Of a stretch of DNA of 64,000 nt, positions 47,001 through 64,000 are shown one piece after another. Positions within the stretch are counted from its first letter, which is position 1, and each line of letters starts with the position of its first letter. Both the position numbers and the translations under genes were made by a program. The notes beneath the pieces are model-generated. The model made no database searches. It was not told where the DNA came from and worked only from the letters and a program-made list of their open reading frames with translations. This DNA comes from Botryllus schlosseri (lineage: Eukaryota). Location of the stretch: contig CM119382.1 in NCBI GenBank assembly GCA_051294905.1, positions 9,424,001 through 9,488,000 on the forward strand, given 5' to 3'.

Positions 47001-50000
47001 TCGTATTTTGATTATCTACCTCGCCTGGAAAGGGTTAATTGTATCTTGTTCCTACTAGGATAATTTTGATTGATATATTTCCGGAATCAGTGTGATTACA
47101 TAGTTACTATTTACCAATGCAGAAACAATTTAAAATGTTAAGTTAATTGTTATACATATGAGATGCTCATATATCATAGTGTATTTACTGTCGCCCGACC
47201 AATATTTGCAGAGGCCTCTAAAGTTATCAAGTGATCAACAAATGGCATGGTCCTTCCAAAATATCTTGGAATAAAGTCGCACATGTCTGAAACATAGGAC
47301 TACTGGATGTCTGTGAACCAAATAATTGGGAAATACATTGTAATCACAGCCGTGATGAAAATTTTGGAGGGGCAACATGACAATGTGACACGCTGAAAAA
47401 TATGATGTCACATTGTGTAGTTGAAAAATTAAGCCTTCTCCATCCCTAGGTATGCTATGCAGCATGTATCCAAGCAGCAGATGAACAAAAACCACCGAAA
47501 GTAACAAAAATCTGCCGACGGATAATAATTTAAAATGAATGAGAGATTATAAGTACACTTTTAAATCCCACTAATTGGAATATGATCAATTACAAGACAC
47601 TTACACAAGGGTATCCTTGACTGAGACATTGCCAAAATGATTACCAAGGTCAGTACAGATACCACACTGATTGGGCAAATTACCAGATTGCACAAAATCT
47701 TGACTTGACACATCCAATCATTATGAAAAATAATAGTGACACTAGAACTGGTGCTTGAATTATATAAAAATCGTAATAATCGTAGGCTCTAACCAGGGGT
47801 TCCTAACCTTTTTTACACCATGACCCCCTTCGAGAACTTTGAAAAATCAATGCCACCCTCCCCCCCCCCCTATTTTTTATTCCTCCAGCTTCCCCGGATT
47901 CATTGACTCATTAGTTTGCACTGTTGAACATAGCATAAATAGAGGCTTGCACACTCCTTCTTGATGTTGTAGATGTATAAAGTCAAGCTTACGATAACTT
48001 TCACCATACTTTCTTTTTCCGCTGGAGTAGCCATTAGTCTAATTTCAAATACAAAAATAGTAGTAAAACAAATAAAGTAAACTCAAGTTCAAGAAGTTGC
48101 TTATTGGCGTACTAATATTGACAATAATTTTTAATCTACTTCTTTGTTATAGTAGAGTCGTCTTGCTGATGAAAAATGTTTCCATGGCCCCCTAGGTTAA
48201 AAACCGCTGCTGTTTATAGATATTATATATCAAGTAAGGAAAAAAACAAGTGGGAAGAGAGACTGACACGAACCAACCATTGTTTACAAAGAAGCATTAT
48301 GGACAGTAAGAAACAGAGGACGACATGAAAGGAGTGAACCTAAAATTCCTTGAAATTTCTGAATTGTTGATGCGATGTTATAGGGTTACCATATTGTGGA
48401 ATCGGGAAAGGAAGACACTTTTTCAAAATTTTTAGACTTACGATACTGGGAGTAAAATCAAGAAAAAATGGTAAAATTACCACAAAATCGTGGTTTGTTG
48501 ACTAAAAAAAAAAGTCGTCGCGTACGTTCGAACCCCGAAATTCCTGCTCAGCGTCATTTATGCGTATTTTCACTCGAATCTATCCATAATCTTAGCTCTA
48601 AAAGCTGTAAAGGAGGACGGATTGCCGGATTTAGGCGTCCTCGGAGGACATTTTCAAAAACCTGAAAAAAAGAGGACAAATCCTCCTAAAGGTGGATGTA
48701 TGGTAACCCTATATATTATGATTCACTGAAGTTTCTCTATTTGGAAAGCTCTGACCGAATATATTTATGTTCATTGTTCACTGTATCATACAGAAAATCA
48801 CCTTTAACTGTGAGGGTTGCGGTGGTGGAGCTAAGTCCGGTGACGCATCTGTAATCTGAAGCGTCTTGCAACGTGCTGTTGTGAATAATAAGCGAACGTT
48901 TGTATCCATCCTGAATAACAGTGTATCTGAAAATATATGAGAATGCCATAGATGACTGCTTGCGAAATAGTCTACCGCCAGGAAAATAATAAATCCATAG
49001 TTTGCTTTTAACACATTGCATAGAAGATACAGCATAAAGTTCTACAATGGACAAGGACAATACTAGAGCACAGGGTTGTAATGACTCGAGTCATTTTCTT
49101 GAAATAAGGGAAATGACCAGACCCACCTTGAATCAATCTGTTTGTTGACTCAACTTGTACACGGATCATTGTACATAACTCGAACCGAGTCATATGACTC
49201 GAGACTTGGACTACCATGACAGGCATTTCACTGTCATAGCACTTTATCGGAGGTGGCCACTGTACAAATTCCTGGTGCATCTTCGTGTTTAATGTAAAAT
49301 GACCAATGACACTATGAATAGGTTCACTTTTCAAAAATATATTCAGTATATATATAATAATATACAGGGGCTCTTCCACCCAATTGTCGTGACAACTTCA
49401 CGCAAAAAGGGATGTATGCCTTAAAACTACTTTTACTCAACAAAATAACAAGTGTAAAAAAAAGTAGTTTTGACTAAAAATGACAAGTGGAAGTAGTCAG
49501 AAAACCAACTACTTGAGTAACTAGAACAAATCCGCGAATCTACTTGAGTACTCCGAACAAATAGAAGTACTTTAATGACCACCTCTGGAAGTATGTATTG
49601 CCCATACAAAATATAAATCATCATTGTTAATTAATTTTAGCCACAGACTTACTTGTCTGCGTTTTCCTTCAAATTGATAGCTTTCCCATCTTTGTACCAA
49701 ATCACTTCTGCATCGCTGTCTTTCACTTCACACTCTAGTATCACTGTCTCCGTGACAGTGCAAGTGTAGGCGTCCAGACACGATGAGAACGCACTGGTGT
49801 CTTCCACTTCCAGGCCCGATATCAGCTCGTAATTGAGTTGTCGTAATTTATCAATATCGTCTGAAACAGAGGATGAAAGAAGTGCAAAGGTCGTCCAGCC
49901 TCATTATTGAAAATGTTACCTGCCACTTTCAGATTCCCTGTCGACGAATAAGGTCCGGCTACTATTCTATAGCGTGATTCATCTTCTTCGCCGACGCCCT

Positions 50001-52567
50001 TGACAGTGAGCCTATAGACATCGCCGATTTCTTCAATGGTATATTTTTCGCTCGGGTTAAGTTTGGAGTTGTCTTTATACCTGTTACGAAATCATGTCAC
50101 CAATTCGTGCAATGCGGTGTCAAATACGAACGATCGGAAGCCAAGCTGCGACAGCGTCAAGATGTAGAATATGTAATACGAACCAATTAACTTCGATTTC
50201 CGGTAAATATGTTTTCAGCTGGGCTTCAAACGTAACATCTGTCCCCTTGAGTGCGTTGATATCGTGCAGGCCGACAATCTCCTTCACCGCGTCTTCGACG
50301 GACGTTCTTCTCGCCATCAAACTCATCAACCCGTGGATTTTCTCGTCGTCACCTTTCGCGATTCTCATCAAGTCACCGCCCTAATAGAAAGTCCACATAT
50401 GGAGCTGTTTCTGTGTCAATTGTATTAGCTTTCACCGAAACGTCAGCCTAACTAGGTGTAGTTTGTCGGCACAAACCCTGGCCTAACGCGCGAACATAGC
50501 AACTCACTGCGCTAAGCGGTTATATTGCCACTTATCGCAGATAAGTCGAACTCTAAGAACTTGGATTCGGACACATACACATTACACGATATTGAGGCAG
50601 CAGCAAGATACAATCGCCTTCCAAAAATTCATTGTTACCTCAAAACTTTCTTGGAATTTGGAAAGCGTAGGCTTGAAGTCTTTCAGATTGTAAAACCTTG
50701 CATACTTTTCATATTCACGAGGATCGACCTCACGCAGCAATTCGATAATTTCCCAAATACCGTCAGATTTTACCTCCGGCCGATCCGTTGACGACACTCT
50801 GAATGTGGTTTATGGTTAAATTACAAGGCCAGGCATAGGCCAACATATTACATACTTGCGTAGACTGTCGAGCTCTAGCGTTTCCTTCATGAAGCTCTCT
50901 GACACGGATACTTGAAAAGACGAATCAGCCTGACCGTGCTTATTCGCCGCGACGCACCTGAATTATAGTGCACTCTCAATTTTTGTCACGTCCTCTCGAC
51001 CGAGGCTACGAAATTACAAATAATATCAGCCAGCAAACCTGTAGACACCGGTATCTGGCACATCTACACTCGAGACGGTGAGGGTGTGAGTGTGAGTTTT
51101 CTCATCATGCTGCATCTTGAAACGACCATACCCGTGTATTTTCATCCATTTACCCTTAGTCCAGTGAACATTTGGTTTCGGATTTCCGTAAATTCTTGCA
51201 GTCATTACCATCGTTTGTCCTAGAGAAGGAACCAATTGTTTTAAACCGTACAGTTTCGTTGAACTGAAGTTTAGTATGTCTATACCCGAATGTTTTCGCT
51301 GATCTTTTGGCCGCTTCATAAAAACGGGAAGTGTGATTTCTGGGTCGGGTTCCTCGACCACATCATCCAGTCCTTCATCAGACTCTTCTGTTGACGACGG
51401 TCGATCAGCTGTTAACGATTGTTTATTTGTCAGTATCGACACCTCGTTCGCGCGATAACTGGATTATGATACTCACCAGTCAACAGGCTGAAACGATACT
51501 TGGTTTCACCGTGATTATTGGCGGCGTAGCAATCGTATACTCCGTAATCACAGTCTTCCACATGACAAATTGTCAAGACATATTCCTTTTTCAATTCATT
51601 ATGAAAAATTGATATTCTCCCATCATCTTCCAACAGTTTTCCCTGTGTAAAAAGCGAGATAGAGGCCTTCTGGGAAACATCAAACATTCAAACATACATG
51701 GATAAGTATATACAAGCCTACGGATCGCATAGCTGTATATCGATATTCTATAAATGGCTGTCTTCACAATTCGTAAAATGCCCCAGACAAAATGTGCTTT
51801 TCGTTCATTCGTCTCGATAACGAAGGCCTACTAACCTGTTTCAACCACAAAACCTGTGGTGCTGGATTCCCCACGATACGACTACGGAATGTAACCTTGT
51901 CTTGCAATTTGGCGATCTCACTTTTCGGCTTTTTGGCGAACTCTGGCGCCGCACCTGTGAAGCAAAAAGTGCAACCTCGTCAGCTGCTGCGCAAGGATCG
52001 ACATTGCTTATAGATCTACCTCTAGCATTAGATGGTGAAGCTGGATCCATTCCCCTGAGCTTCTGTATGACAACTCAATACGTGCAATCGACTTCATGTG
52101 AATAAAACAGCGTGTTAGGCGGATGGCCAGACATGTGCTCCGAAAACTTCGATAACAGGCATACCTGAATATTTGCGGTTACTTCGTCCAACGCGATACC
52201 GATCTTCGTATAGATCCGGAAACGTTTCGTGGACGAAATCTAAAATTGTCGTAACATCGTTGGTTTTGATATTGTATTTTTCTAATTGATTGCAGAATCA
52301 TACGTACCAGTGTTGAAAATGGTAAAATCTCACTATTCCAGGATATCGTTTAATCAAGTTCATTATATCAGTTTCACGCAGGATAAAATGGTAATAATAG
52401 TAGTATGAATTTATAGGCAACGGCCAGCGTAAAAATGACAAATGCGTTACAATTAAAGTTCCAGAATCATAAATGTCAGTTATTATTCCATTTATGAATG
52501 CATCCACCACAGAGTTTGAACGGATTGTGCAAATAGTTCTGTCGCGCCCAGTGAGGGGCAATACGAA
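935..52567 (-). CDS. TTN: Titin/connectin ortholog, multi-exon, 5' portion; continues beyond the left edge, true 5' end unresolved
   Basis: Dozens of GT-AG exons splice in phase into Ig and Fn3 domains (W..P..DGG..I..Y.VE motifs). Domain order follows vertebrate titin, e.g. FAGNKHGKASADFKVQVI-DKPSSP...EKRDIRRKMW (I/A junction), WSKSGKTAGPNCTYK, FRVCAENAAGAGPFSVPTDP, CRVQVIDTPG...EKRKIDGRAWRK. Last exon seen is 1267-935. Confidence 0.93.
1420..1823. mobile_element. GACTCGAGTC-repeat MITE family (hAT-like), copy 1; left end approximate
   Basis: Clustered GACTCG/CGAGTC motifs, ends TTACAACCCTG; homologous to 21682-22125, 49071-49215 and ~59545-59640. Confidence 0.65.
2070..2583. mobile_element. 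TAGGGCTGTT hAT MITE family, left-truncated copy
   Basis: Ends TTGAACAGCCCTA; internal TTGATAAAATTGTT/AATTGAGTCGAATTTG modules. Confidence 0.7.
5270..5571. mobile_element. TAGGGCTGTT hAT MITE family, partial copy
   Basis: Same internal modules (TAACAATTTTATCAAGTAGCC), ends CAACATCCCTA. Confidence 0.6.
7330..7735. mobile_element. TAGGGCGA hAT-type family, internal fragment (inverted relative to the other copies)
   Basis: Reverse-complement match to 39960-40320 and 42590-43075 (e.g. GGAAAGTATCTT..GTTGTACTACAACAAATTTTAATTATTTC). Confidence 0.7.
11152..12039. mobile_element. Tc1/mariner-pogo-type MITE
   Basis: TA|CAGTAGACCGGGGTAATTTGGAC ... GTCCAAATTCACCCCGGTTTACAG; internal GGGGTAACTTTGGACA repeats in both orientations. 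Confidence 0.7.
15997..16587. mobile_element. TAGGGCTGTT-related MITE with long inverted arms
   Basis: TIRs TAGAGCTCTTCAAAAA / TTTTTGAAGAGCCCTA; roughly 170-bp near-perfect inverted arms; no TSD seen. Confidence 0.8.
19720..19812. repeat. Unclassified ~100-bp structured repeat (copies at 30845-30934 and 41670-41770)
   Basis: Shared GAAAGATAGGAA.GTGT.GAAACGACTTGGAGTAGTCTT...TCAGACACCCA; all three copies in the same orientation. Confidence 0.7.
20980..21120 (-). mobile_element. Degenerate LINE reverse-transcriptase remnant
   Basis: Translation contains VTCGVPQGSV followed after a short gap by LLGP (RT motif GVPQGSVLGP). Confidence 0.4.
21682..22125. mobile_element. GACTCGAGTC-repeat MITE family, copy 2
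   Basis: Starts CAGGGTTGCA; shares GGCCAAGACCGACATTTCATTGTAA-like block with 1550-1575. Confidence 0.65.
23132..23779. mobile_element. TAGGGCTGTT hAT MITE, full copy
   Basis: TIRs TAGGGCTGTTAAAAAA / TTTTTGAACAACCCTA; exact 8-bp TSD ATATGTAT (23124-23131, 23780-23787). Confidence 0.88.
25275..25400 (-). mobile_element. Short hammerhead-bearing repeat (~125 bp; Penelope pLTR- or retrozyme-like)
   Basis: TGTTGCTGACG...GAATATACT...TTCTGTACCTTCAAGAAGCTCTTCAAA shared with 42704-42794, ~56955-57055 and, without the ribozyme part, ~43510-43570. Confidence 0.6.
25353..25386 (-). ncRNA. Hammerhead motif, same family, titin-sense orientation, stem I disrupted
   Basis: Core identical, but the 3' strand of stem I reads GCGC instead of GGGT (2 of 4 pairs lost). 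Confidence 0.6.
26442..27242. mobile_element. TAGGGCTGTT hAT MITE, older copy
   Basis: TAGGCTGTTCAAAAA / TTTTTAACAACCCTA ends with family modules; TSD not preserved. Confidence 0.72.
29532..44675 (-). CDS. TTN: Titin distal tandem Ig segment (about 17 further Ig domains over many exons)
   Basis: Repeated F...L.D..V.E...A.F.CEV....V.W.K.G...L.I......D...Y.C pattern, e.g. VKFLKTLKNLESFEKDPVTFECEI, VKFTKKLQDVSVAEMDVAELSCEV; junctions checked were GT-AG. Confidence 0.85.
32310..32404 (-). mobile_element. tRNA-derived SINE head (truncated)
   Basis: A-box TAGCGTAATGG, B-box GGTTCAATCC, then GGTCGGGTCAGACCAAAGAC; no acceptor stem. Confidence 0.72.
32820..33062. mobile_element. TAGGGCTGTT hAT MITE, right-end fragment
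   Basis: Near-identical to 26960-27242; ends TTTTTGAACAACCATA. Confidence 0.68.
33646..33756. mobile_element. Charlie-like hAT mini-MITE
   Basis: CAGCGGTTCTCAAA / TTTGAGAACCACCG; flanks ATCTAGTT / ATCTAGAT (7/8 match). Confidence 0.78.
36038..37679. mobile_element. 1.64-kb hAT foldback element
   Basis: TIR TAGGGTTGTCCAAAA; inverted arms of about 700 bp; exact 8-bp TSD ATAAACAG (36030-36037, 37680-37687); no ORF. Confidence 0.92.
37910..38551. mobile_element. Charlie-like hAT MITE
   Basis: CAGTGATTCTTAACC / GGTTAAGAACCACTG; flanks TTGTAGAC / TTGCAGAC (7/8 match). Confidence 0.78.
39932..40320. mobile_element. TAGGGCGA hAT-type family, left portion
   Basis: Begins TAGGGCGATTTTTTT; homologous to the copies above and below. 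Confidence 0.7.
41222..41479. mobile_element. CAGAGGTGGTCA hAT MITE with TACTTGAGTA repeats
   Basis: TIRs CAGAGGTGGTCA / TGACCACCTCTG; flanks TTTGGCTG / GTTGGCTG (7/8). Partial copies at ~2880-3048, ~20198-20305, ~42507 and ~49425-49587. Confidence 0.82.
42704..42794 (+). mobile_element. Hammerhead repeat copy inserted into a hAT-type element
   Basis: Interrupts sequence that is contiguous in the homologous copy at ~40060-40085; flanked by CGAATT at 42698-42703 and 42795-42800. Confidence 0.65.
42725..42758 (+). ncRNA. Minimal type I hammerhead ribozyme motif (intact copy, antisense to titin)
   Basis: ACCC-CTGACGA-G(TGTCAGC)C-GAAA-ATAT-TC-GGGT: core CUGACGA/GAAA, stem I ACCC/GGGT, palindromic helix III AATATT, UUC triplet with predicted cut after 42754. 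Confidence 0.72.
45040..45575 (+). repeat. G-rich minisatellite, unit about GGGATATTAGGGTTGGGGAG
   Basis: About nine degenerate ~20-bp units at 45382-45575 plus TTAGG(G) units at 45040-45090. Confidence 0.85.
45091..45380. mobile_element. TAGGGTTACCATA hAT MITE embedded in G-rich minisatellite
   Basis: Reverse-complement match to 48381-48711. Confidence 0.75.
45854..49860 (-). CDS. TTN: Titin I82/I83-like Igs, short linker at the PEVK position, first distal Ig (exons 49860-49653, 48926-48802, ~46910-46770, 46361-45854)
   Basis: In-phase exons encode Ig strands (VILECEVKDSDAEVIWYKDG; ATFEVTTQRESTKINWY; VTYKCTVSGDVTVSWYRNG). The acceptor of the ~46910 exon is uncertain. Confidence 0.78.
47794..48209. 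mobile_element. Charlie-like hAT MITE
   Basis: CAGGGGTTCCTAACC / GGTTAAAAACCGCTG; no TSD preserved. Confidence 0.6.
48381..48711. mobile_element. TAGGGTTACCATA hAT MITE
   Basis: TIRs TAGGGTTACCATA / TATGGTAACCCTA; homologous copies at 45091-45380 and ~55345-55626. Confidence 0.8.
49071..49215. mobile_element. GACTCGAGTC-repeat MITE family, left-end fragment
   Basis: Starts CAGGGTTGTAATGACTCGAGTC, the reverse complement of the 1823 end. Confidence 0.6.
49920..51408 (-). CDS. TTN: Titin N2A element: acidic linker, I80-like Ig, UN2A helical segment, I81-like Ig (exons 51408-51286, 51219-51039, 50957-50856, 50798-50639, 50380-50184, 50080-49920)
   Basis: GNPKPNVHWTKGKW (I80-like); IIELLREVDPREYEKYARFYNLKDF and DDEKIHGLMSLMARRTS (UN2A-like); YLPEIEVNWYKDNSKLNPSEKYTIEEIGDVYRLTVK...YRIVAGPYSS (I81-like). 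Confidence 0.88.
51477..51954 (-). CDS. TTN: Titin: first recognisable Ig domain (exons 51954-51836 and 51642-51477)
   Basis: Spliced translation APEFAKKPKSEIAKLQDKVTFRSRIVGNPAPQVLWLKQ|GKLLEDDGRISIFHNELKKEYVLTICHVEDCDYGVYDCYAANNHGETKYRFSLLT; canonical sites, phases match. Confidence 0.85.
52020..52567 (-). CDS. Candidate non-Ig 5' exons of titin (52567-52304, 52239-52165, 52062-52020)
   Basis: Three stop-free exons with AG/GT ends and matching phases (0,0,1), introns of 64, 102 and 65 nt, leading in frame into the first Ig. No recognisable domain; part could be UTR (in-frame ATGs: MNLIKRYP..., MDPASPS... at 52050). Confidence 0.45.
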
Positions 52568-53746
52568 CTACAGATTAGAAATCGAGTCTAAAAATTAGTG
52601 TTTTGCTTGATTCAAGACCATTCAAGTATAACCGGGCATTTCGAATATAGAATTCGGTAATTGGGAGCGGTATGGGAGATTGCTGTCTTACAACGAAAAA
52701 ATGAGATATATATTTGAAAGAATAATTTAGACAAATAGCGTGGAGACGCCTCCAAGATATATCTATACATTCGAAATGTGTTGGCTTATCCTTTCAGACT
52801 GACTCGACAAATCCCCAACGAATATTGGCTGCTGTGGAAATTCAAGTTGGATATTATTGGGCGGATATAAATTGCCAATGTTAGGATTGCTAGCGGAGTC
52901 ACTATATAATTTGGCGATGGCATCGATTAATCATATATTTGGCACCATCATGATATATAGGCAATTAGGCATACTACAGTCGGCGGTTGGGTAAGGTTGG
53001 CTTGGGTTAGGCCAGACCTGGGATAAGTGCGGCCCGCGAAGTTATTCTGTGCATCCCGCGAAAGGTTGCTTGGATCAGAATATAAAACTTGCTTTTTGAT
53101 TGACTAAAACCATAGGCCGTATCAAATGAACAGGAAAATCGTTTACTTTGAAGCCTGTTCATTCATATGTCACGATTACGCTGCCTACGTACCTGACATG
53201 CGTAATCCAGATTCAAAATATAGACAATGTGGCAAAGTATGAGTAGCAATTGAAGTCACAAGAAATCACTCTTTCCATATAGTTTAGTTCAAACCATCCT
53301 TGTTGACATTGTAAAATTACGCATTATACGGTATGTGTTTCAATTAAAAATGCGATGTGTTTCCAAATCCCTAATTCGTAAAACAAGTCAATCAGTGCTC
53401 GCGATTACTATATGACCCATTATATCCATCGCCCATAAAGGATTAACGGGCATGCCAAAAAAAGAAAGTCGAACACTGAAATTCAAAGAAGGTCTAGAAT
53501 TTAGAGCACTAAATATTCGTATACTGGAGTCAGGGGTAAACCCGTCCTTTCAGTTTTTGCCGATCATGTCGCCGAGATTAAGGATTTTAATTGAAGTCGG
53601 TCTTGTTACAAAGGCACGAAACACTCGGTCGAGGGACGGCGAAGTTCACAAAAACTGCAAGCTTCGCTCATCATTATAGCCACACTGCTCGGAAGACAGC
53701 GACCAATAAAATAAGCTTTGTACACAATTACATATACATTTCAGTG

Positions 53747-54056
53747 TAGTGGTTCTCGAACTGGGAGACGTGAAAGCATCAGAAGGGTGGCGCGAAACCG
53801 AAGTATACTGAAAATAATTTCGCGCTATGCGCGATATACACCCAGCTTATAGTCGTTGCTCTGTGTATATTATTGTCAAACTTTGATATTTCGCAATTCT
53901 CTCATCAACACCCATAATCTTCCATACCATGAAACTATCCGTTGGGATGGCTAACATTCTGGTTGCATATTTTCATATTTTGTGATATGATAAGTGGGCG
54001 CGAAATTGTTCACTATCATAAAGGGAGGCGTGACTAAAAAAGTTTGAGAACCACTG
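53747..54056. mobile_element. Charlie-like hAT MITE
   Basis: TAGTGGTTCTCGAAC / GTTTGAGAACCACTG. Confidence 0.62.
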
Positions 54057-55626
54057 TTTTAGAACGTGGATAGGGGTTTAAAGATAGCTAAAATGTATCA
54101 TGTCCAACATTATTTCGAATCATGACAGCTAATAGATATTTTTTAATTATTCGTCACTAAACTTAAATCCTGGCCCTAACCCCCAACCATAACCAGTAAT
54201 ATCCTTCTAATCCATCCATAGCGCAATCTAACCAAACCCATCTCCTTATACTTAGCCTAACCAAACCTTACCCGACCCCTGACACTATAATACATTATGA
54301 CATCGCCAAAGTATATGCTGACATCGACAAATCCACTTCATATTTTTGTTGGCCTCTGAATAATAAATACTTCCTTCTAATTTCTGTCATTTCCCCCAGT
54401 ACCAAATCCCTCGCCCTTTCCCAGATACTGACTATCGAACTGCAGTTATACAGTCCCACGCCAGTCAACGCTCTTTCTGAGCATCACACGTCTGTGGCGA
54501 CGGCGTGAATTATATATACATGGACTTTATTGCCTAATTATCACCCGTTCAGAAGGTCACCGTGTTCAAATCAAGTATATTTCGTTGGCTGAGCAACTCG
54601 TCAGCTGCATGCTCGATGTGTTAAATATATGTCCTTATTTTTGGCACAGCCGAAGATAGCGACATATAGGCCTTCTAAAAATGCATATTATGGCTATAGA
54701 AACGTGTTTTTAATTTTCATGACCGACGTTTCAATGAATTTGAGCCAGTCTCTGATTTTGATTTGGACTTGTAGTTGAAGATCTTATCGAGATAAGAGAT
54801 GCACGTGATCCGCATTTGGGATTGGAATAGGATTGCATTAGAAACCGTGGCGTTGGTTATGAACAAGCGTTTGATAGATTTACATTTCGGTCAATGTAAT
54901 GTAATCTCTGTTATATAATTGTTTTCGGGAATCGTACGTGAATCAGGCAGCGTATTGAAACTGCGATTTCGGTTTTAGTGAAAGGGGTTTGAACACTGTT
55001 TCCACCAGTGGGTCTCGATGGGAATTGGTAAGAATAGAATTCTAGTGTTGCTACATCCTGTGTAGGTGTTTAAAGTCCGCTAACGCTAATCGCCTTTTCA
55101 GTTATCTGACGTGAATCCGGTAGCGTATGAAAGACTATAAAAACGATTTCAGTCTTAGGGGAGTTGGGATTTTACCCCTATTCGCCTCAGTGGATCGCGA
55201 TAGAATTTGGGAGGAATAATGTTCAAGCGGTTCCACGTCTTGTGTATAGGTGCCGAAAGTCCGTTGCACAATCGTTTTTCGGTTATCTGACGTGAATCCG
55301 GCTGCTCCTATATAAATTCGTGATTTCATTCTGGGGAAGAAGCGGTTAGGATCCTAGGACGCCTAGATGTCCTCCTTTTTGGCAATTCGTCCTCCTTTAT
55401 AGCTTTTAGAGCTAAGATAGTGGATATTCTAGAGAAAATTGCCATAAATGACGCTAAATAGGAAATTCGTGATTCAAATGAAAGTGACGACCTTTTGTTT
55501 TCAGTCAACCGACCGCGAAATGGGAAAAATCTGCCATTTTCAGGATTTTCCTCCGGTATTCTAAGTTTGAAAATTTTGACAAAGTGTCCGCCTTTCCCGA
55601 TTCCAATATATTATATGCTAACCCTA

Positions 55627-56370
55627 CGAAAAATGAACACCAAATCCTAGCAATGCAACGTCATAGTCAGAGTTCACGACTCTCATCTGTACCTTTACGT
55701 ACCAATTTATCGCCTTACTACCGTAAGCATCGAATTTTGCGAGTTGATGAATTATATCGCTTCGAAGTATCGAAAGTTGTTCACAAATATTTTTCCAATA
55801 GTCTGCCTCCTGTGTTTGATGACTTTTTCATACCTGCTAAACATGTCCATTCCCATTACACGAGATCCTCGTTGTGGAAGCTCTAGCTCCCTCTCTCCTA
55901 TCCGTATGGAGCAATCCTACATCACGTGACTTATCGCATAGTTATAAGCGAGCGCATATCGCATATTAGCCCTTTTGATATGAGACTCACGTACGCCGTA
56001 TAACCTACTGCTTGAAGTAACCACCCGTCCAATACATATGGAAAAGGCAATTGTCGTCTATTGAACTACCAGTCAAGAGCTACACGCAGGACGTTCGTAT
56101 CCGCTACTGCCAGCTAAGGATATTGGAAGCCGCTATCCGTAACATACGGACTTGCTGTATATACCATCGCAGAATATCCGACAGACAGCTCCTTTCACCG
56201 CATCGTCTAAAGGAAACATCTACTTACCCCCACCCAATAGCAACCTAACTAAGAGATCTATCGACTACTCGGGACCTATCATCTGGAATGCATTACCACC
56301 ATATATCCGTGAATTGCCTTATAATAGATTTAAAAAAGCCCTACTTGATCACCTCTTGTCGTTACACTAA
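55627..56370 (+). mobile_element. 3' fragment of a non-LTR retrotransposon ORF2 (CR1/L2-like tail), interrupted by a solo LTR
   Basis: ILRVDELYRFEV..VHKY....LP..F..F......H.HYTRSS|SKGNIYLP...TKRSIDYSGPIIWNALP..IR...FKK.L..HLL, the typical post-RT tail; frame restored when the insert is removed. Confidence 0.8.
55873..56202. mobile_element. Solo LTR (330 bp)
   Basis: TGTGG...CCGCA termini with 4-bp TSD TCGT (55869-55872, 56203-56206). Confidence 0.8.
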
Positions 56371-56969
56371 CACTGTTGCCCTACCTCGCCCAGACATTGC
56401 TTCATTGATCATTTGCTACTATTGTTTGATTTTTTTTCTATTTTTCTTTCTTAACTAAACATTTTTTTACAGCCAGAATGTTCAGAGTCAAGTGTACCTG
56501 TTTGATGCTGGTGTGATCAGACTAGATGACCTTCACGGTCTTATCGATCATTCCTATCTAATACCGAATACTGTGCACGCATATTTCTGTACCACCATCA
56601 CTGCCGTTTGTTATGTATTTTGGTTTGATGAAAATAAAGACTCTCTCTCTCTCTCTCAGTGGCAGCTTTCGAGTTTCGATTAGGTTGTGTCCGCACCATA
56701 GGACACTATGGTTGGATAATCCCGCCTGTGCGAAAAATTATCGAGACGACAGATTTCGCGTCATCGGGTGGGGGGGCTCACACTTTCATCTGTGGGCCTA
56801 GGAGTCGACCTTTATCAAAATACATCAGCCCAAGCTTTGTCAACAAAAGGAGTTCGTGTACCATCTTAAAATAGTACAGTGAACGCTCTCTTATTTGAGA
56901 TCTCATTTCATGCTGGAGACGTCATGATATTCAATGTTGTTTCCTATTCTCGACTAGTTGCTGACGATT

Positions 56970-57003
56970 ACCCCTGACGAGTGTCAGCCGAAAATATTCG
57001 GGT
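56970..57003 (+). ncRNA. Minimal type I hammerhead ribozyme motif (intact copy, intergenic)
   Basis: Identical 34-nt motif to 42725-42758; predicted cut after 56999. Confidence 0.72.
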
Positions 57004-58007
57004 TCATTTCATTATGAAGATACTATGTTGAAGTTCTGTACCTCCAAGAAGCTAAAAATTTTGAAAAGGTCTCCTCTTTTCAGACTCCCAAAATATGCTA
57101 ACCCTTCAATCTTTTCAATATATTGCAATATTGTAGTGGATTTGATTTTTAAAAAAGATAATTATTAATAATACTCTTTATCAGAGATGCATGGCTGAAT
57201 CGTGGTTTCTCATGATCAAAATCCGGATCCTGTTTCCGCTTGTAATGTTATCCGGAACAAAGGAATCCTGCTCAAAGCTCTGACGCCCTTGCTCTGACTC
57301 AAAGCTCTGACGCCCTTTGTAATTGTGCCTCGAAAATGCATTGCAGTGGTGGTGCAATGATACCGAGCGATTTCAAATTCATACAGAACATCGAAGTAAA
57401 ATGAGTGAATTTAGAAATATAGAATCCTGTTCTGATGCGGATCCTGCACTCGGCTAAACATGCGAATCCGGATCCAATCGTGTTTTAAAAAATATTGTCG
57501 GGTTTGTGTGTAACCTACGGAGGTTAGTTATCTATAGTTAGTGGTGTATGTATAGTGTACCTTAGTAATCTGTAGTGCGAGTGTACGATCTTTATTCCAA
57601 GATACTGCTTGTGTAAATGGAGAAGAACCTCTATCAGGGACAGTGTAATTGATGGCAACGCCATGCACAACTTTCCGTTTAATTTCTCAATTATTCTATG
57701 CACGTAACCCTTCTGTCACGCGCAACTTACTGCCGAAAACAACCATTGTTTCCAGTCTGGTATCAGATGGCCATAGTGTTCCTCAGTGTGTTGAATGCCA
57801 ATGATGGAAGCACTTGTAAGTTATAGCAGCATGCGATTTTTAGTGATAGCTGAGAATTGAGATAGTGATAGCTGCGATGGCTGATTATATCCACGGGGCC
57901 TTGTTATACTGATTAGGCTACGAATATACAATTATTATATATTTTTTATTTAATTCCGCTTAAGTTGTTATAATAGCAAGCTTAAAGTTCCGTGTTATAT
58001 ATGCATT

Positions 58008-59495
58008 ATGTCACAAGTGGAGTGTGATCTTTGCTTCTACCTCGTGAAAAAATACTATGGACGGATCGTGGCGACTGTCGGCCAATTTCTCTGCAAAAAT
58101 AGATTGCAGACGTTGGGTCAAATCATCCACGGGACCAAGCTAAAACCTTCGTTGGTGCGCAAAGCGTTGTGTGTCCTGATCAAACACGGGCTAGTGAATT
58201 TTGCACGGAACAAAAAAAGGATGGAATACAGTTTTGATACCAACGGCACGACGCATATACTCATGATACCTAAAATCATCTATACTACCAAGTCACTTTA
58301 TGGCGATCCCGGTGAGATGATCATCGAAGAAACCCTAATGCATGGCATGATAGAAAAGGACTCCATAATTAATACCGTGAATCGACGCTTGGAGGAGGTA
58401 TCGCCCAAAGTTGAAAATGGTGTTGTAGAGAAAGTTTTCAATGATCTAGTCGCGGCAAGATTTTTAATTTCCGAACCCGTAATTCCATTGGATGATGAAA
58501 ATAAAGAAAAAGCCGGGGACGACGTCGAAGTAGACGTTGGATCTAAAAGAAAAAGAATTTGCAGTGATGATGAGATTGAGAACATTGCTAAAAAAGTTAA
58601 AGTTCTGGACACTTATTCTGTAAACTTTGTGAGATTCAACCAATATTTCCGGGATCAATACATCGTAAATGGAATCAAGCAAAAATTTGGTGCGCACTGC
58701 GGGGAGATCTTACGTGCGATATTAAGAATAAGCGAAGTTACGACATCGCCACAAGCAGAGCGCACCCAACCAATATCAAGCAACGAGATAAGGCAAGCGT
58801 TGCCTGTACATTTAATCATGCCGATAATACACGTGGAGCAATATCTAAACATAATGATCAGCGATCCGGGCAATCTATTACAAAAAATTGAAGAGAGCAG
58901 CAGCAACCTCTATGTGGTTAATCTGAAGAAATGCGTCGAAGCCGTGTGCCAAGCGAACGTGCTGTCTTACATTCTGGAGAGGTATGGCAGCAAGAGTTGC
59001 AGGATTTTCAAACTTCTGTTGCTTAAAAGCCATCTGGAACAGAAACAAGTCGAGGATTTCGCTATGATCCCGTCGAAAGAAGCAAAAGAGCTGTTGTACC
59101 AATTGTGGTCAGATCACATGCTCATTATGCAGGAAATTCCTAGAACTGTCGACCACGCGCCGTCACGGACGTACTACTTGTTTAACGTAAACATCAACAA
59201 AGTCATCAGGACTTTGCTGACTCGATCGTATCGCACGCTGCTGAATCTTTTAGCCCGGCAACGTCACGAGGTAAAATCCAATAAAAGACTAGCGGAAAAG
59301 CAAGCGAGGGTGGAACACATCAAGGTTACGATTGAAAACGCGGACGAAGCTCAGCTGCAAGAGATCGACGAAATGCTGACTCCGGCGGAGCGTGACCAAT
59401 TGCAGAAAATGGAACACTGCCATAATAAGCTTGGGAAAGCGCAAATTCAAGTTTCTAACACGGCGTTTTTATTTTCGTTACATTTGACTTATTAA
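58008..59495 (+). CDS. POLR3C: RNA polymerase III subunit RPC3/C62, intronless, 495 aa
   Basis: N-terminus MSQVECDLCFYLVKKYYGRIVATVG...VRKALCVLIKHGLV; EIPRTVDHAPSRTYYLFNVN and C-terminal coiled region typical of RPC3. Confidence 0.93.
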   Translation: MSQVECDLCFYLVKKYYGRIVATVGQFLCKNRLQTLGQIIHGTKLKPSLVRKALCVLIKHGLVNFARNKKRMEYSFDTNGTTHILMIPKIIYTTKSLYGDPGEMIIEETLMHGMIEKDSIINTVNRRLEEVSPKVENGVVEKVFNDLVAARFLISEPVIPLDDENKEKAGDDVEVDVGSKRKRICSDDEIENIAKKVKVLDTYSVNFVRFNQYFRDQYIVNGIKQKFGAHCGEILRAILRISEVTTSPQAERTQPISSNEIRQALPVHLIMPIIHVEQYLNIMISDPGNLLQKIEESSSNLYVVNLKKCVEAVCQANVLSYILERYGSKSCRIFKLLLLKSHLEQKQVEDFAMIPSKEAKELLYQLWSDHMLIMQEIPRTVDHAPSRTYYLFNVNINKVIRTLLTRSYRTLLNLLARQRHEVKSNKRLAEKQARVEHIKVTIENADEAQLQEIDEMLTPAERDQLQKMEHCHNKLGKAQIQVSNTAFLFSLHLTY

Positions 59496-60129
59496 TATTC
59501 AAGGATGATCATTTCAATACTGTACTGAAATGAATCAATCTGAGCCGTGTCATTTGACTCGATACATGATTTGAAGAAGTAATGGACTCATGAGGGGAGT
59601 GGACTATCTGAGTCATTACTGGGTCATGACTCATGAGCCTGTCCGAAGATCCTACTACACTCAATCATTAGAGGGCTGGTCTGTGCATATCAACCCGGAA
59701 CCGTAGTGTTGATATCTATCTAGACCAGTGGTTTTCAACCGTGGGGTCATTTGCCTTGAGTGTCGCTAAGCTGCTTTTTTTTTCTAAGTAATGAGCTTGC
59801 CAAATTTTTTTGGGGTCGTGGGTGGACCATTTTTAAATCGGAAATTGGGCCATAAGCCCATTACCATAATAGTAAAAGGTTATGAAACAGAAACTCTGGT
59901 CTTGACAGAAACTCTAAAGAGTTTCATTGCATTCAATGCACGTCATTAACCACAGGGCTTAGGTGCTCATACCGCCCAACTCTACGTTATGAACATTGAC
60001 ACATTTTCAAGTATTTTGACCTAGATCATTGTTTCAATGATCATAGGCCCATGCTTTGGGATTAGTGATTTCATTCCAACACTGTTCAACTTCAGTGCTT
60101 TTCAACTACTATTCTGCTGCTGGTATCTT

Positions 60130-60155
60130 AATTATATTTCTTTATTTAGTTTTAG
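60130..60155 (+). promoter_or_regulatory. 3' splice acceptor (possible SL trans-splice site) upstream of EMC4
   Basis: TTTCTTTATTTAGTTTTAG ending 26 nt before the ATG. Confidence 0.55.
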
Positions 60156-60181
60156 ATCATAGCACCACTAATTATATTGCA

Positions 60182-60718
60182 ATGTCGCTTGGAGATAGCC
60201 CAGTCAAGAGAAAGAACGATGGAAAATGGTTCATTGACTTGACGCCCCGGAAAGGAGACAGGAATCGGGAATGCCCAGACCCACCTGGATATTCAACCAA
60301 CAGACAACAACTGAAAGAAGCCTCTGGTGCAGCTAGAGAAGGCCCCGATCAACAATTGATCAACAAAAGAAGCTGGGACATTGCATTAGGCCCTATCAAG
60401 GGATTGCCGATGAATGTGTTCATTATGTATATGTCCGGTAATGCCATATCAATATTCCCAATCATGATGGTGGGAATGATGTTTTTCCGACCTATCCAGG
60501 CCATTATGGGAATAAAAAACACAATGAAAATGCTGGATAGAGCCGACAACAAGCATTTTCTAACATTCGTTTTTGCAATGGGCAATCTCTTGGCTATCGG
60601 ACTGGCCGTGTATAAATGTCACGGAATGGGGTTATTACCGACTCACGAATCGGACTGGCTTGCATTCAAGACTCCGTTGGAAAGGCGAGAATTTGTGTCT
60701 GGCGGATTTTCATTATAA
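60182..60718 (+). CDS. EMC4: ER membrane protein complex subunit 4 (TMEM85), intronless; probable start ATG 60182
   Basis: KRSWDIALGPIKGLPMNVFIMYMSGNAISIFPIMMVGMM..RPIQA and YKCHGMGLLPTHESDWLAF. The ORF-track start at 60056 (TTG) runs through a pyrimidine tract/AG acceptor at 60154-60155. Confidence 0.93.
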   Translation: MSLGDSPVKRKNDGKWFIDLTPRKGDRNRECPDPPGYSTNRQQLKEASGAAREGPDQQLINKRSWDIALGPIKGLPMNVFIMYMSGNAISIFPIMMVGMMFFRPIQAIMGIKNTMKMLDRADNKHFLTFVFAMGNLLAIGLAVYKCHGMGLLPTHESDWLAFKTPLERREFVSGGFSL

Positions 60719-61449
60719 TTCTCGTAACTGTTGAGAGACTGTATATGCTTTATTTTAAAGAAATGATATCTTACCGGCACATGCAGTTGAAACCTTGTTG
60801 CGAACAATACTACTAATATTTTCTATAAGGATTTGTTGTGTCAAAAGGCTATGTGTTGTTTTTGTGTGGGACGAATTGAATGATGTACCATGCAGAGAAA
60901 GATTGGGAGCGGTACTTTTAAGTTATGTGGGTAAAGGACTATGCTTTGATTCATTTTATTACGACTGATAGGCTACCATTCATGTGTTTCTATACGTGAT
61001 TAGTGTAGCAGATGAAATAGAATTTGTGCAATAGGTAATTTAGTTTGTATGTCTGTGCTTCTCAACCTGTCGGTTATATAGGATATGGATATGTATCATA
61101 TAAATATTTGTGTCATTCGGGAAGAATTTTTGCAGTGCGAATGAGTTTCAAAATTCCATGACAAAATGTTACAAAGATAAGTCTCGGGCAAGTTTGTTCC
61201 AGTGTCAATCATTAATTTAGTGAACACTAATTTCTCAGCCGAAAGTTGTACAATTGTAATTTCTTAATTTTGCTTAGCTGCTACATGGTGTTGTAGGCCT
61301 ATATATATTTCACAGTAATCATTATCAATCATTCTATACTATCTTTTGACGACTTGCAGCTAACTCATTTCTAGTGATGTGTTCCTAACACCGCATCGAT
61401 ACTACCAGAGGTGTTGTGATGATTGTTATTGTTACATAGCTGATGTTGC

Positions 61450-61471
61450 AATGTTCTGTGTATCTTTACAG
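61450..61471 (+). promoter_or_regulatory. 3' splice acceptor (possible SL trans-splice site) upstream of SETD9
   Basis: TGTTCTGTGTATCTTTACAG ending 17 nt before the ATG. Confidence 0.55.
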
Positions 61472-61488
61472 ATTGTATTGTTTATGTC

Positions 61489-62235
61489 ATGAGAGTAATT
61501 AAATCATTGTCAAAGAGATGGAGCTCATACAAGTACAGGTTTGTTCCGTGGATGAAGTTGAAGATACGCAGTCAGCCCACGACTAGAGTAATTGATGTCG
61601 AATCTGATAAAGTTGTTCCCGATGAAGAAATTTTTAGTCAGTTAAAAAGCCTTTTTGAGCACTTCAAGTCTCCTGGTGGTTTACAGTCATTTCATAAACT
61701 CAAAATTGCTGAAAGCACGATTGCTGATGCTGGATGTGGAGTATTTTTGACTGGTAGCAACCTTCCTAAAGGTCAAATAGTTGCACTGTATCCTGGAACT
61801 GTGTATCTACCATATGAGCCAATATTTCTCCAGTCGATATATAACAGATACATTTTCAAATGCACAGATGGTGTCCTGATTGATGGTAACAACAGAGGCC
61901 TGTCCAAGACGATATACAAGTCCTGTGAAGGCAGAGATAGAATTAGCCATCTACCAAGTGCTGACTTGACTTGGCTTGACCCAGAACCCACTGTGAGCGT
62001 TAACGTAGGCCAATTTGTGAACAACAGGTCCCTGTCAACGCCTGCCAATGTGTGTTATCAAGAATTTGATTTTCCTGTGGATTTTGACAGGGCCTTGAGA
62101 AAATTTATACCTAATGTATATTATCAAAGTAGGAACTTCCACCGTGGAATGAGAACTGTGGTCCTTGTTGCGGCGCGGGATATTTCCGAAGGAGAAGAGC
62201 TGTTTTCCTCGTACTACACTGTGATTAAATCATGA
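61489..62235 (+). CDS. SETD9: SET domain-containing protein 9 (C5orf35-like), intronless, 248 aa
   Basis: [11 protein letters not shown]-terminal motif; GVFLTG...[12 protein letters not shown]; GQFVNN; [15 protein letters not shown]. Confidence 0.9.
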
Positions 62236-62564
62236 GTTCAATGCTACGCAAATTTATATCACCTAAACTTTTTACTTATGGTAAAAGTTCAGCAACATTA
62301 GCTGAACGACACCTGGCCTCCCAACCAGGCAATGGTGAAGATACCGTGAAGAAAAAGCCAGAGATTGGTGGCGTTTGTTGTATGAGTGGCTGCGCCAACT
62401 GTGTATGGATTAAATACGCAGAAGAATTGCTGGAATACTACAAAAGCGTTGGCGGTGCGGGGGTTGACCAAGTGATGGACGCGATCGATAAAGAAGTTCA
62501 AGATGATAATTTGAAAGCATATCTGAGATTTGAAATCGGCCTCATGCTCAAGAAGAAGTCATGA
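62232..62564 (+). CDS. OXLD1: Oxidoreductase-like domain-containing protein 1; start at ATG 62232 or 62241
   Basis: [19 protein letters not shown] and [12 protein letters not shown] motifs; basic, Ser-rich N-terminus resembling a mitochondrial presequence. Confidence 0.88.
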
Positions 62565-62896: not shown

Positions 62897-64000
62897 TCAA
62901 GATGAATGTTCTTCTTTCCATTTCTTTTTAGCTTTCATAATAACTTTCCGGTCTAGCACCATGGCGAAGGAGACGGCAAGGATGTAATACAAACTGCACT
63001 TGTACAGTTTCGAAGCACTCGAACTGTTGCCTTTTCTGTATATAGGAAAACAAGTGTTTTTCAAGCAAAAAGCGGCCATCATTATTATGGATGAGAAACT
63101 TACCTATGAAATTTGATGGACTCCGTCATCAGCCACGCATTGAAAGGCGCAGACAGTGCAACAAACGCCCATGACGTTATACCGGTCAAGGGCGCTGCTA
63201 ATGACAAACCGCAGAGCGCGAGTGAGTGTCCGACGGCCACATGCTTTGTTGCCTGCGGATGTGACAACGGGAGCATATGATAATTCCCTCTCGCGTAATC
63301 ATTCTTTCTTCGCCATGCGAGAGCGAAAAAATGAGGAAACTGCCAGCAGTAGAGTATACCGGCCAATATGAATGCCCCTGAATAATAAATAGCTTGGCGT
63401 TCATGAAGAACAATGCAGAAATTTAGCACTGATGTTTCTCACCTGCATCCAATGATCCCGTTGCTGCAGTCCATCCCATTATTGGAGGTATGGCTCCAAC
63501 AATTGAACCCGCCCAGGTATTGAACCAATGCCTTCTCTTCATTGGTGTATATATACCAGCGTATAACAGAATATTGGCCAATCCAAGAGCCGCCGTCAGC
63601 CCATTCACACCTACATCAAAATAGTGTATATCAATTATATGCCTATATCTCTTGTTTATATACTCACCGTAGTATAAACACGATACGCCGACAACTCCAG
63701 ATGATACAGCAAACATAGTAGCATGCAATGGTGTTATAATACTTCTCACTAATGGCCTGTTTTTGGTGCGGTCCATCAGCCCATCATATTCGACTTCAAT
63801 GATCTGAAAGTATCACTTCGCTAATAGACAATGTCTTTTGCATATTTATTGATGAAGATTACTCAAGTTGTGTTCTAACTTACTTGATTGAAGGTATTAG
63901 CAGCGCATGAACATAACACCGTCCCCACTGTAGCAAACAGGAATACTTGCTGATCGAACACTACTGGCGCCAAGCAGTATCCAGCATCGGCTGTCATCGC
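62897..64000 (-). CDS. COX10: Protoheme IX farnesyltransferase (heme O synthase), 3' portion; exons >64000-63884, 63803-63668, 63610-63443, 63377-63104, 63035-62897
   Basis: CAANTFNQ|[68 protein letters not shown]; all junctions GT-AG and in phase. Confidence 0.94.

What the first reader, a model, noticed from the sequence alone, without database searches (positions are those of the whole stretch)
51400..58000. Titin appears to begin one Ig upstream of N2A, with no Z-disc or proximal-Ig region in the window
Seen: upstream of the I80-like Ig there is only one Ig and ~130 non-domain codons. The next 5.4 kb are transposon debris with no Ig-like ORF, followed by unrelated genes including same-strand COX10. 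Established: vertebrate titin has Z1Z2, Z-repeats and dozens of proximal Igs before N2A. Inference, three options: (a) a naturally 'headless' titin or paralog; (b) titin split into two genes; (c) the phase-0 acceptor at 52568 receives distant exons, so the housekeeping cluster is nested in a titin intron.
Basis: partly seen in the sequence, partly recalled or inferred. Interest (0 to 1): 0.72.

Follow-up and report, generated by a model that had tools for sequence, protein, structure and literature searches.

The report
Sea-squirt titin starts just before N2A
In this sea squirt the giant muscle-spring gene titin seems to start its protein only one bead before the N2A signalling hub, from a tiny first exon also found in a distant sea squirt. 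The part that anchors vertebrate titin in the Z-disc is therefore not encoded next to it.

Summary
The core observation holds. On the minus strand, only one Ig domain (51954-51477) lies upstream of the I80-like Ig and the N2A helix motif. No Ig-like or other domain signal occurs between 52.0 and 64 kb on either strand. The neighbours are POLR3C, EMC4, SETD9, OXLD1 (+) and COX10 (-).

Two details fail. The 89-codon ORF at 52567-52301, behind the proposed acceptor at 52568, looks non-coding, is not conserved, and cannot be spliced in frame to the Ig.

I found instead a 31-nt first coding exon (52050-52020, MDPASPSNAR). A 65-nt phase-1 intron joins it to the Ig exon. A distant sea squirt (Logan contig L001) has the same ATG-GAT mini-exon, the same phase-1 intron and the same six downstream intron positions.

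The sequence between the upstream AG and the ATG differs in length, phase and letters. It therefore looks like 5'UTR, perhaps a trans-splice site.

Best reading: this titin gene really starts here, so option (c) is disfavoured. Options (a) and (b) cannot be separated. No RNA data could be reached, and an earlier scan note reports a second N2A locus elsewhere in this genome.

The parts
52051..52064 (-). AG acceptor (52064-52063) followed by 12 nt of presumed 5'UTR. It is a candidate spliced-leader trans-splice site or 5'UTR intron acceptor.
   Evidence: Read from the sequence. The L001 counterpart has 26 nt between the AG and the ATG, with no similarity and a different phase. Its use as an acceptor is inferred, not shown.
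52020..52050 (-). First coding exon (31 nt): ATG, then MDPASPSNAR plus the first base of a Gly codon. Purine at -3 and G at +4.
   Evidence: It is the only sensible ATG-started phase-1 exon within 300 nt of the Ig exon. L001 has MDFNAK in the same place. 0 of 20000 shuffles reproduce the MD..NA[KR] pattern.
51955..52019 (-). Intron 1: 65 nt, phase 1, GTAGAT...pyrimidine tract...CACAG.
   Evidence: It falls in the same size class as the next introns (57-81 nt). The L001 counterpart is 88 nt and phase 1.
51836..51954 (-). Ig-A, N-terminal half (the upstream-most Ig of the gene).
   Evidence: Pfam I-set, 1.8e-5. 49% identical to L001:1102-1218.
51477..51642 (-). Ig-A, C-terminal half.
   Evidence: Pfam I-set, 4.1e-7. 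Collinear with L001:1626-1794.
51286..51408 (-). Acidic linker (12 D/E in 41 residues) plus the first strand of the I80-like Ig.
   Evidence: Exon model and alignment with L001.
50856..51219 (-). I80-like Ig in two exons (51219-51039 and 50957-50856), with the WxKGKW signature shared with vertebrate I80.
   Evidence: Pfam I-set, 7.9e-11. Its best vertebrate match is the Ig just before N2A-Us: 40% identity, E=4e-18.
50639..50798 (-). N2A unique-sequence exon (tri-helix motif EVDPxEYEKYAR).
   Evidence: PDB 7NIP 'Isoform 11 of Titin', E=2.4e-8. Relatives listed.
52301..52567 (-). It is not an exon.
   Evidence: Codon score -0.04, spacer-like. No conservation. No usable phase-1 donor. No Pfam match.
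52065..57950 (.). 5.9-kb spacer between the titin start and the divergent POLR3C gene. It holds interspersed repeats and no domain signal.
58008..62564 (+). Cluster of POLR3C (58008-59495), EMC4 (Pfam match inside the ORF 60056-60718), SET-domain/SETD9 type (61489-62235) and OXLD1 (62232-62564).
   Evidence: Pfam. Same order and orientation in Styela clava chromosome OZ123512.1.
62921..64000 (-). COX10 (UbiA family), on the same strand as titin, running off the window end.
   Evidence: Pfam UbiA. tblastx to the Styela clava COX10 model.

Best explanation
This titin-type gene has a genuine translation start at 52050. A 31-nt first coding exon (MDPASPSNAR) is joined by a 65-nt phase-1 intron to the exon that opens the first Ig. 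The encoded protein therefore begins with a short leader, then Ig-A, an acidic linker, the I80-like Ig, the N2A helix and I81, and runs on to the A-band and kinase. The Z1Z2, Z-repeat and proximal tandem-Ig segments of vertebrate titin are not encoded in cis upstream. The mRNA 5' end is most likely made at the AG 12 nt upstream of the ATG. That could happen by spliced-leader trans-splicing, which is common in sea squirts, or from a nearby promoter; this step is inferred. The layout predates the split between this species and Styela clava, because a sea squirt branching outside that pair has the same mini-exon and the same intron positions. Ig-A is most similar to the I80-like Ig itself, so the N-terminus looks like a local duplicate of I80 and not a remnant of the proximal Ig chain. 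Whether another gene supplies a Z-disc anchor is open.
For: (1) The seven-exon model from the ATG to N2A-Us gives an open frame. L001, from a different sea squirt, has the same seven exons with all six intron positions and phases identical. (2) The mini-exon is conserved: both species have ATG-GAT at the start and AAY-GCN-A[GA]R-G|GTA at the end. It is the only sensible candidate in each species, and 0 of 20000 shuffles give the pattern. (3) Upstream of the ATG there is no similarity. The distance to the AG is 12 nt against 26 nt, which is a different phase, as expected for UTR and not for an internal coding exon. An in-frame stop lies 9 codons upstream in the unspliced sequence. (4) Nothing in 52.0-64 kb gives an Ig, Titin_Z or any other significant domain signal, and neither do the 960 nt upstream in L001. 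(5) The POLR3C tree places the L001 species outside the clade of the window species and Styela clava. (6) Genes flanking the titin start differ between species. The POLR3C cluster has no titin within 10 kb in Styela clava or in the L001 species, as expected if the start is a gene boundary. (7) Ig-A's closest relative in the window is the I80-like Ig (36% identity, E=6e-18). Its best vertebrate match is I80.
Against: I have no RNA evidence of any kind. None of the reachable collections held transcripts of this gene from this or a close species. The donor of the mini-exon (GTAGAT) is weak in this species. The shuffle test used a pattern defined after seeing the data. The Ig-A exon has the phase-1 acceptor typical of titin Ig exons, so it could also accept a distant upstream Ig exon. 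No muscle-type promoter motifs are enriched in the 1 kb upstream. Published summaries say that ascidian connectin has an I-band region (PMC12198301, citing Hanashima 2012, which I could not read). An earlier scan note reports another N2A element on another piece of this genome.
Confidence: 0.55

Rival explanations
1. Internal alternative start. The mini-exon is the first exon of a shorter isoform made from an internal promoter, like Cronos in vertebrates. The full-length mRNA starts far upstream, beyond COX10 or the window end, and splices into the phase-1 acceptor at 51955/51954. The housekeeping genes would then sit in a titin intron.
For: The Ig-A exon acceptor is phase 1, compatible with any titin Ig exon. 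The window ends at 64 kb, so the region beyond cannot be inspected. No promoter motifs are seen near the mini-exon.
Against: 12 kb upstream hold no Ig-like or other candidate exon. A transcript from beyond 64 kb would have to pass the same-strand COX10 gene and its 3' end, then run antisense through four genes. In Styela clava the same cluster has no titin Ig within 10 kb on either side. The start codon is conserved in a distant species.
Confidence: 0.2
2. Split or duplicated titin. The gene does start here, but a Z-disc/I-band part exists as a separate gene, or a second, fuller titin paralogue exists. This is compatible with the best explanation and differs only in whether the animal lacks a Z-disc titin segment.
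For: Earlier scan notes, untested here, place another I80-UN2A-I81 element and a titin-like gene with a giant exon on other pieces of this genome. Arthropods and nematodes divide the I-band and A-band functions between two genes (PMC12198301).
Against: One published survey counted a single titin orthologue in Ciona and Oikopleura (PMC5888912, table 1). The other N2A locus could be an uncollapsed haplotype. I could not read any other part of this genome.
Confidence: 0.3
3. Assembly misjoin or recent rearrangement between 52.1 and 58 kb has cut the upstream part of titin away in this assembly only.
For: The spacer is repeat-rich. The adjacency of titin and POLR3C is not seen in Styela clava or the L001 species.
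Against: There is no N in the window. The conserved start codon lies on the titin side of any such join and is also present in another species, so a misjoin would not create the 'headless' appearance.
Confidence: 0.07

Closest known systems
Vertebrate titin (connectin), N2A region I80-UN2A-I81
   Same: The N2A unique-sequence helix motif, an I80-type Ig with the KGKW signature just before it, and Igs after it. By earlier notes of this scan, A-band repeats and a kinase lie further on.
   Different: Vertebrate titin has Z1Z2, Z-repeats and about 80 Igs plus N2B before I80. Here the open reading frame starts one Ig before I80, and that Ig looks like a copy of I80.
Cronos titin isoform (internal promoter in vertebrate TTN)
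   Same: A titin product that lacks the Z-disc end and begins at its own short first exon spliced into the normal exon chain.
   Different: Cronos starts near the I/A junction and coexists with full-length titin made from upstream exons. Here no upstream exons are visible, and the start lies at N2A.
Ciona savignyi 'Titin' fragment H2YLF8 (UniRef) and ascidian connectin (Hanashima et al. 2012)
   Same: The N2A helix is followed by a few Igs and then FN3/Ig repeats, as in this window.
   Different: The Ciona entry is a fragment that begins at the N2A helix, so it says nothing about the N-terminus. The 2012 paper could not be read.
Split giant muscle proteins of invertebrates (sallimus/I-connectin plus projectin; TTN-1 plus twitchin)
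   Same: The thick-filament part is made without a covalently attached Z-disc/I-band part.
   Different: Those A-band proteins have no N2A element, whereas this gene keeps N2A at its very start.

Membership tests
Titin/connectin, chordate type | N2A unique sequence (tri-helix motif) flanked by Ig domains | tested here: met
   PDB 7NIP, E=2.4e-8. I-set domains on both sides. Relatives in fishes, Ciona and another sea squirt.
Titin/connectin, chordate type | A-band Ig/FN3 super-repeats and a C-terminal kinase on the same gene | tested here: inconclusive
   The FN3-rich part of the Ciona savignyi titin fragment matches further minus-strand exons of the window. The kinase is known only from an earlier scan note, 109 kb before the window.
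Titin/connectin, chordate type | N-terminal Z1Z2, Z-repeats and proximal tandem Igs upstream of N2A | tested here: not met
   No Ig or Titin_Z signal in 52.0-64 kb. A conserved start codon at 52050. Half-Ig searches of the PDB show no Z1Z2 preference. The test covers this window only, not the genome.
Spliced-leader trans-spliced sea-squirt gene | AG acceptor a short distance upstream of the start codon, with unconserved sequence beyond | tested here: met
   The AG lies 12 nt (window) and 26 nt (L001) before the ATG. This fits trans-splicing but does not prove it.
Spliced-leader trans-spliced sea-squirt gene | Leader sequence joined to the acceptor in mRNA | not testable with these tools
   No transcript data for this gene could be reached.
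Internal-promoter isoform (Cronos-like) | Upstream exons of the same gene that are also spliced to the shared exon | not testable with these tools
   None is visible within 12 kb upstream. The region beyond 64 kb is outside the window.

The most novel reading that the evidence does not exclude
Sea-squirt titin is natively 'N2A-first'. The protein has no Z-disc-spanning or proximal-Ig segment at all. It is tethered at its N-terminus through a duplicated I80 Ig and the N2A element, for example to thin filaments or ankyrin-repeat partners. The long Z-disc to N2A segment would then be either a vertebrate addition or a sea-squirt loss.
Probability: 0.25. Interest if true: 0.75.

Novelty: new variant of a known kind. 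Interest (0 to 1): 0.5.

Why it matters
Titin is thought to work as a ruler and spring because it spans from the Z-disc to the M-band. A chordate titin gene whose frame starts at N2A would mean one of two things. Either sea squirts anchor titin differently, making N2A an old anchoring site, or they split the molecule between genes as arthropods and nematodes do. Either answer bears on how the vertebrate I-band spring was assembled. The conserved mini-exon gives a precise, cheap target for 5' RACE or spliced-leader RT-PCR.

Tried and rejected
- A second candidate exon, 52239-52165 (phase 1-1, no ATG), has an ambiguous codon score of 0.07 and no counterpart in L001. I set it aside.
- A motif scan for E-box, MEF2, CArG, CRE, T-box and TATA in the 1 kb upstream found nothing enriched in either species.
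- PDB searches with the Ig halves gave unspecific Ig hits and no Z1Z2 signal.
- The protein database searches were of limited use for the main question. The I80 piece found one genomic ORF of a close relative whose DNA is not retrievable. The exhaustive search with the N2A piece returned only short fragments and no full-length titin. The short I80 exon found nothing.
- Exact look-ups of the window's POLR3C and of an Ig-A ORF found no record.
- Two metagenome scans yielded one 12-kb chordate contig (L004). It has I80-Us and the C-terminal half of an upstream Ig, but I could not find that Ig's N-terminal half or a start exon, so it did not help.
- L003 extends L001 downstream only.
- Rfam and tandem-repeat scans of the spacer were empty.
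- Hanashima et al. 2012 is not in the library.
Full report
WHAT IS THERE. The window comes from a sea-squirt genome, according to earlier notes of this scan. A POLR3C tree places it next to Styela clava. A titin-type gene runs on the minus strand from about 52 kb downwards. Its identity rests on the piece 50585-50809(-). This piece matches the solved N2A unique-sequence helix of titin (PDB 7NIP, E=2.4e-8) and N2A fragments of fishes. It also matches the UniRef entry H2YLF8 'Titin' of Ciona savignyi. Pfam finds I-set Ig halves at 51767-51979 and 51433-51687, here called Ig-A. It finds the I80-like Ig at 51029-51463 and further Igs downstream.

NOTHING TITIN-LIKE FURTHER UPSTREAM. I built an Ig profile from 26 Ig pieces of this window. 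It finds half-Ig exons elsewhere at E=1e-9 to 1e-29. It finds nothing better than E=4 between 52000 and 64000 on either strand. Pfam scans of 30 of the largest open pieces of the 52.6-57.5 kb spacer gave nothing reaching Pfam's thresholds. Parts of the spacer are copies of repeats that also sit in titin introns: 55352-55611 and 56946-57026. One plus-strand ORF gives only a weak lead to LINE-tail-type proteins. Beyond the spacer lie POLR3C, EMC4, a SET-domain protein, OXLD1 (all plus strand) and COX10 (minus strand). The window contains no N.

THE 5' END. The Ig-A frame opens at 51979 without an ATG. The exon must therefore be entered through the acceptor CACAG|G at 51955/51954, in phase 1. Within 300 nt upstream there is only one sensible ATG-started exon that ends in a phase-1 GT donor. 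It runs 52050-52020 and encodes MDPASPSNAR plus one base, followed by a 65-nt intron. The next five introns are 57-193 nt (four of them 57-81 nt), so this one fits the local size class. The start codon has G at -3 and G at +4.

CROSS-SPECIES TEST. The exhaustive protein search returned a genomic ORF from another sea squirt, and its contig could be fetched (L001, Logan run SRR10746997). L001 is collinear with the window from Ig-A to I81. Reading it by eye, I found the same seven exons with all six intron positions and phases identical. These include a 19-nt first coding exon, ATG GAT TTT AAC GCC AAA G|GTAAAT (MDFNAK), and an 88-nt phase-1 intron. The two leaders share M, D and N-A-K/R.

In 20000 shuffles of the 300 nt upstream of the L001 Ig exon, none produced such an exon, and 1.8% produced any MD-started one. 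The pattern was chosen after seeing the data, so this number is indicative only.

Upstream of the ATG the two species share nothing. The nearest AG acceptor lies 12 nt away in the window and 26 nt away in L001. These are different reading phases, which argues that this stretch is untranslated. An AG so close to the start codon is what spliced-leader trans-spliced sea-squirt genes look like. That step is inferred.

HOW FAR APART ARE THE TWO SPECIES? The same sample gave a POLR3C contig (L005). Its protein is 48% identical to the window's, against 59% for Styela clava and 49% for Ciona. In the tree it branches outside the window-plus-Styela clade, on a long branch. The start-exon layout is therefore older than the split between this species and Styela clava.

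The 'phase-0 acceptor at 52568' is the TAG that opens the 89-codon ORF 52567-52301. That ORF scores -0.04 on a codon-usage log-odds scale. Spacer ORFs score -0.02+-0.04 and coding pieces +0.16+-0.06. The held-out exons of Ig-A, linker, I80 and N2A score 0.08-0.17. The ORF has no counterpart in L001. It contains only two poor phase-1 donors. Its good donor at 52305/52304 is in phase 2 and creates TGA with the next candidate exon (read). I conclude that it is not coding. The true non-domain leader is about 11 codons. The only other non-domain stretch is the 41-residue acidic linker between the two Igs.

SYNTENY. In Styela clava chromosome OZ123512.1 the genes POLR3C, EMC4, SETD9, OXLD1 and COX10 keep the same order and orientation. 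The 10 kb on each side hold no Ig. The upstream neighbour is a discoidin-domain gene. In the L001 species the 10 kb upstream of POLR3C also lack titin. The adjacency seen here is therefore lineage-specific. That fits a rearrangement breakpoint between genes, with the titin start as a gene boundary. It does not fit an old nested arrangement.

WHAT IS Ig-A? Its closest relative among all open pieces of the window is the I80-like Ig (36% identity, pairwise E=6e-18). No other Ig piece reaches E=1e-3. Against vertebrate fragments its best match is also the Ig just before N2A-Us (34-37%), and not the Ig before that one. Ig-A therefore looks like an old tandem copy of I80 and not the last member of a proximal Ig chain.

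INTERPRETATION. Three things are shown:
- a conserved, complete start of the reading frame one Ig before I80;
- the absence of any upstream titin-like exon within 12 kb;

Two things are inferred: that this ATG is the main or only start, and that the 5' end is made by trans-splicing or a nearby promoter.

Option (c) needs a transcript that reads through the same-strand COX10 gene and its 3' end. It must then run antisense across four genes and skip a conserved start exon. I give it about 0.2.

Options (a) and (b) both accept that the gene starts here. They differ in whether a Z-disc/I-band titin part exists elsewhere. I could not read any other part of this genome. Earlier scan notes, untested, report another I80-UN2A-I81 element and a titin-like gene with a giant exon on other pieces. 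These may be a paralogue, a split partner or an uncollapsed haplotype. One published survey counted one titin orthologue in Ciona and Oikopleura (PMC5888912). A review states that urochordate connectin has I-band and A-band regions (PMC12198301, citing a 2012 paper that I could not obtain).

VERDICT. The best reading is a sea-squirt titin gene that natively starts at N2A. This is a moderately interesting variant of a known protein, pending RNA evidence and a genome-wide search for the missing N-terminal modules.

Noticed in passing
window 54922-55301: Three diverged copies (70-96% identical) of a unit about 175 bp long. Each copy carries TGACGTGA, a CRE-like core. Tandem Repeats Finder does not call the array.
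   Followed up: partly
window 56946-57026: A copy, 95% identical, of the short element at 42701-42781 and 25332-25399. Other notes of this scan call that element a mobile minimal hammerhead family. Rfam gives no match here at gathering score.
   Followed up: partly
window 55352-55611: An interspersed repeat with copies in titin introns at 48391-48626 (78% identical) and 45156-45365 (68%).
   Followed up: no
L004 (JGI metagenome contig JGI24158J21664_10010813), 3769-8030: A 12-kb contig in an environmental metagenome carries a chordate titin I80-N2A region with long introns. Its I80 is split at the same YR|C position as in the sea squirts. The source animal is unknown.
   Followed up: partly
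P0003 (636 aa, from the N2A-helix search): A protein of unknown origin with six tandem units of about 72 residues. It weakly matches the N2A helix piece (31% identity, E=1e-7, six stretches). This may be a chance similarity of helical repeats.
   Followed up: no
window 51219-50856 and L001 2376-2795: The I80-like Ig is split by a phase-2 intron at the conserved YR|C in both sea squirts and in L004. This may be a useful marker for orthology of this Ig across chordates.
   Followed up: partly
L002 (Styela clava OZ123512.1) 10001-18915: The five-gene block POLR3C-EMC4-SETD9-OXLD1-COX10 is conserved in order and orientation between this species and Styela clava. In the L001 species (L005), EMC4 does not follow within 2.3 kb of POLR3C.
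   Followed up: partly
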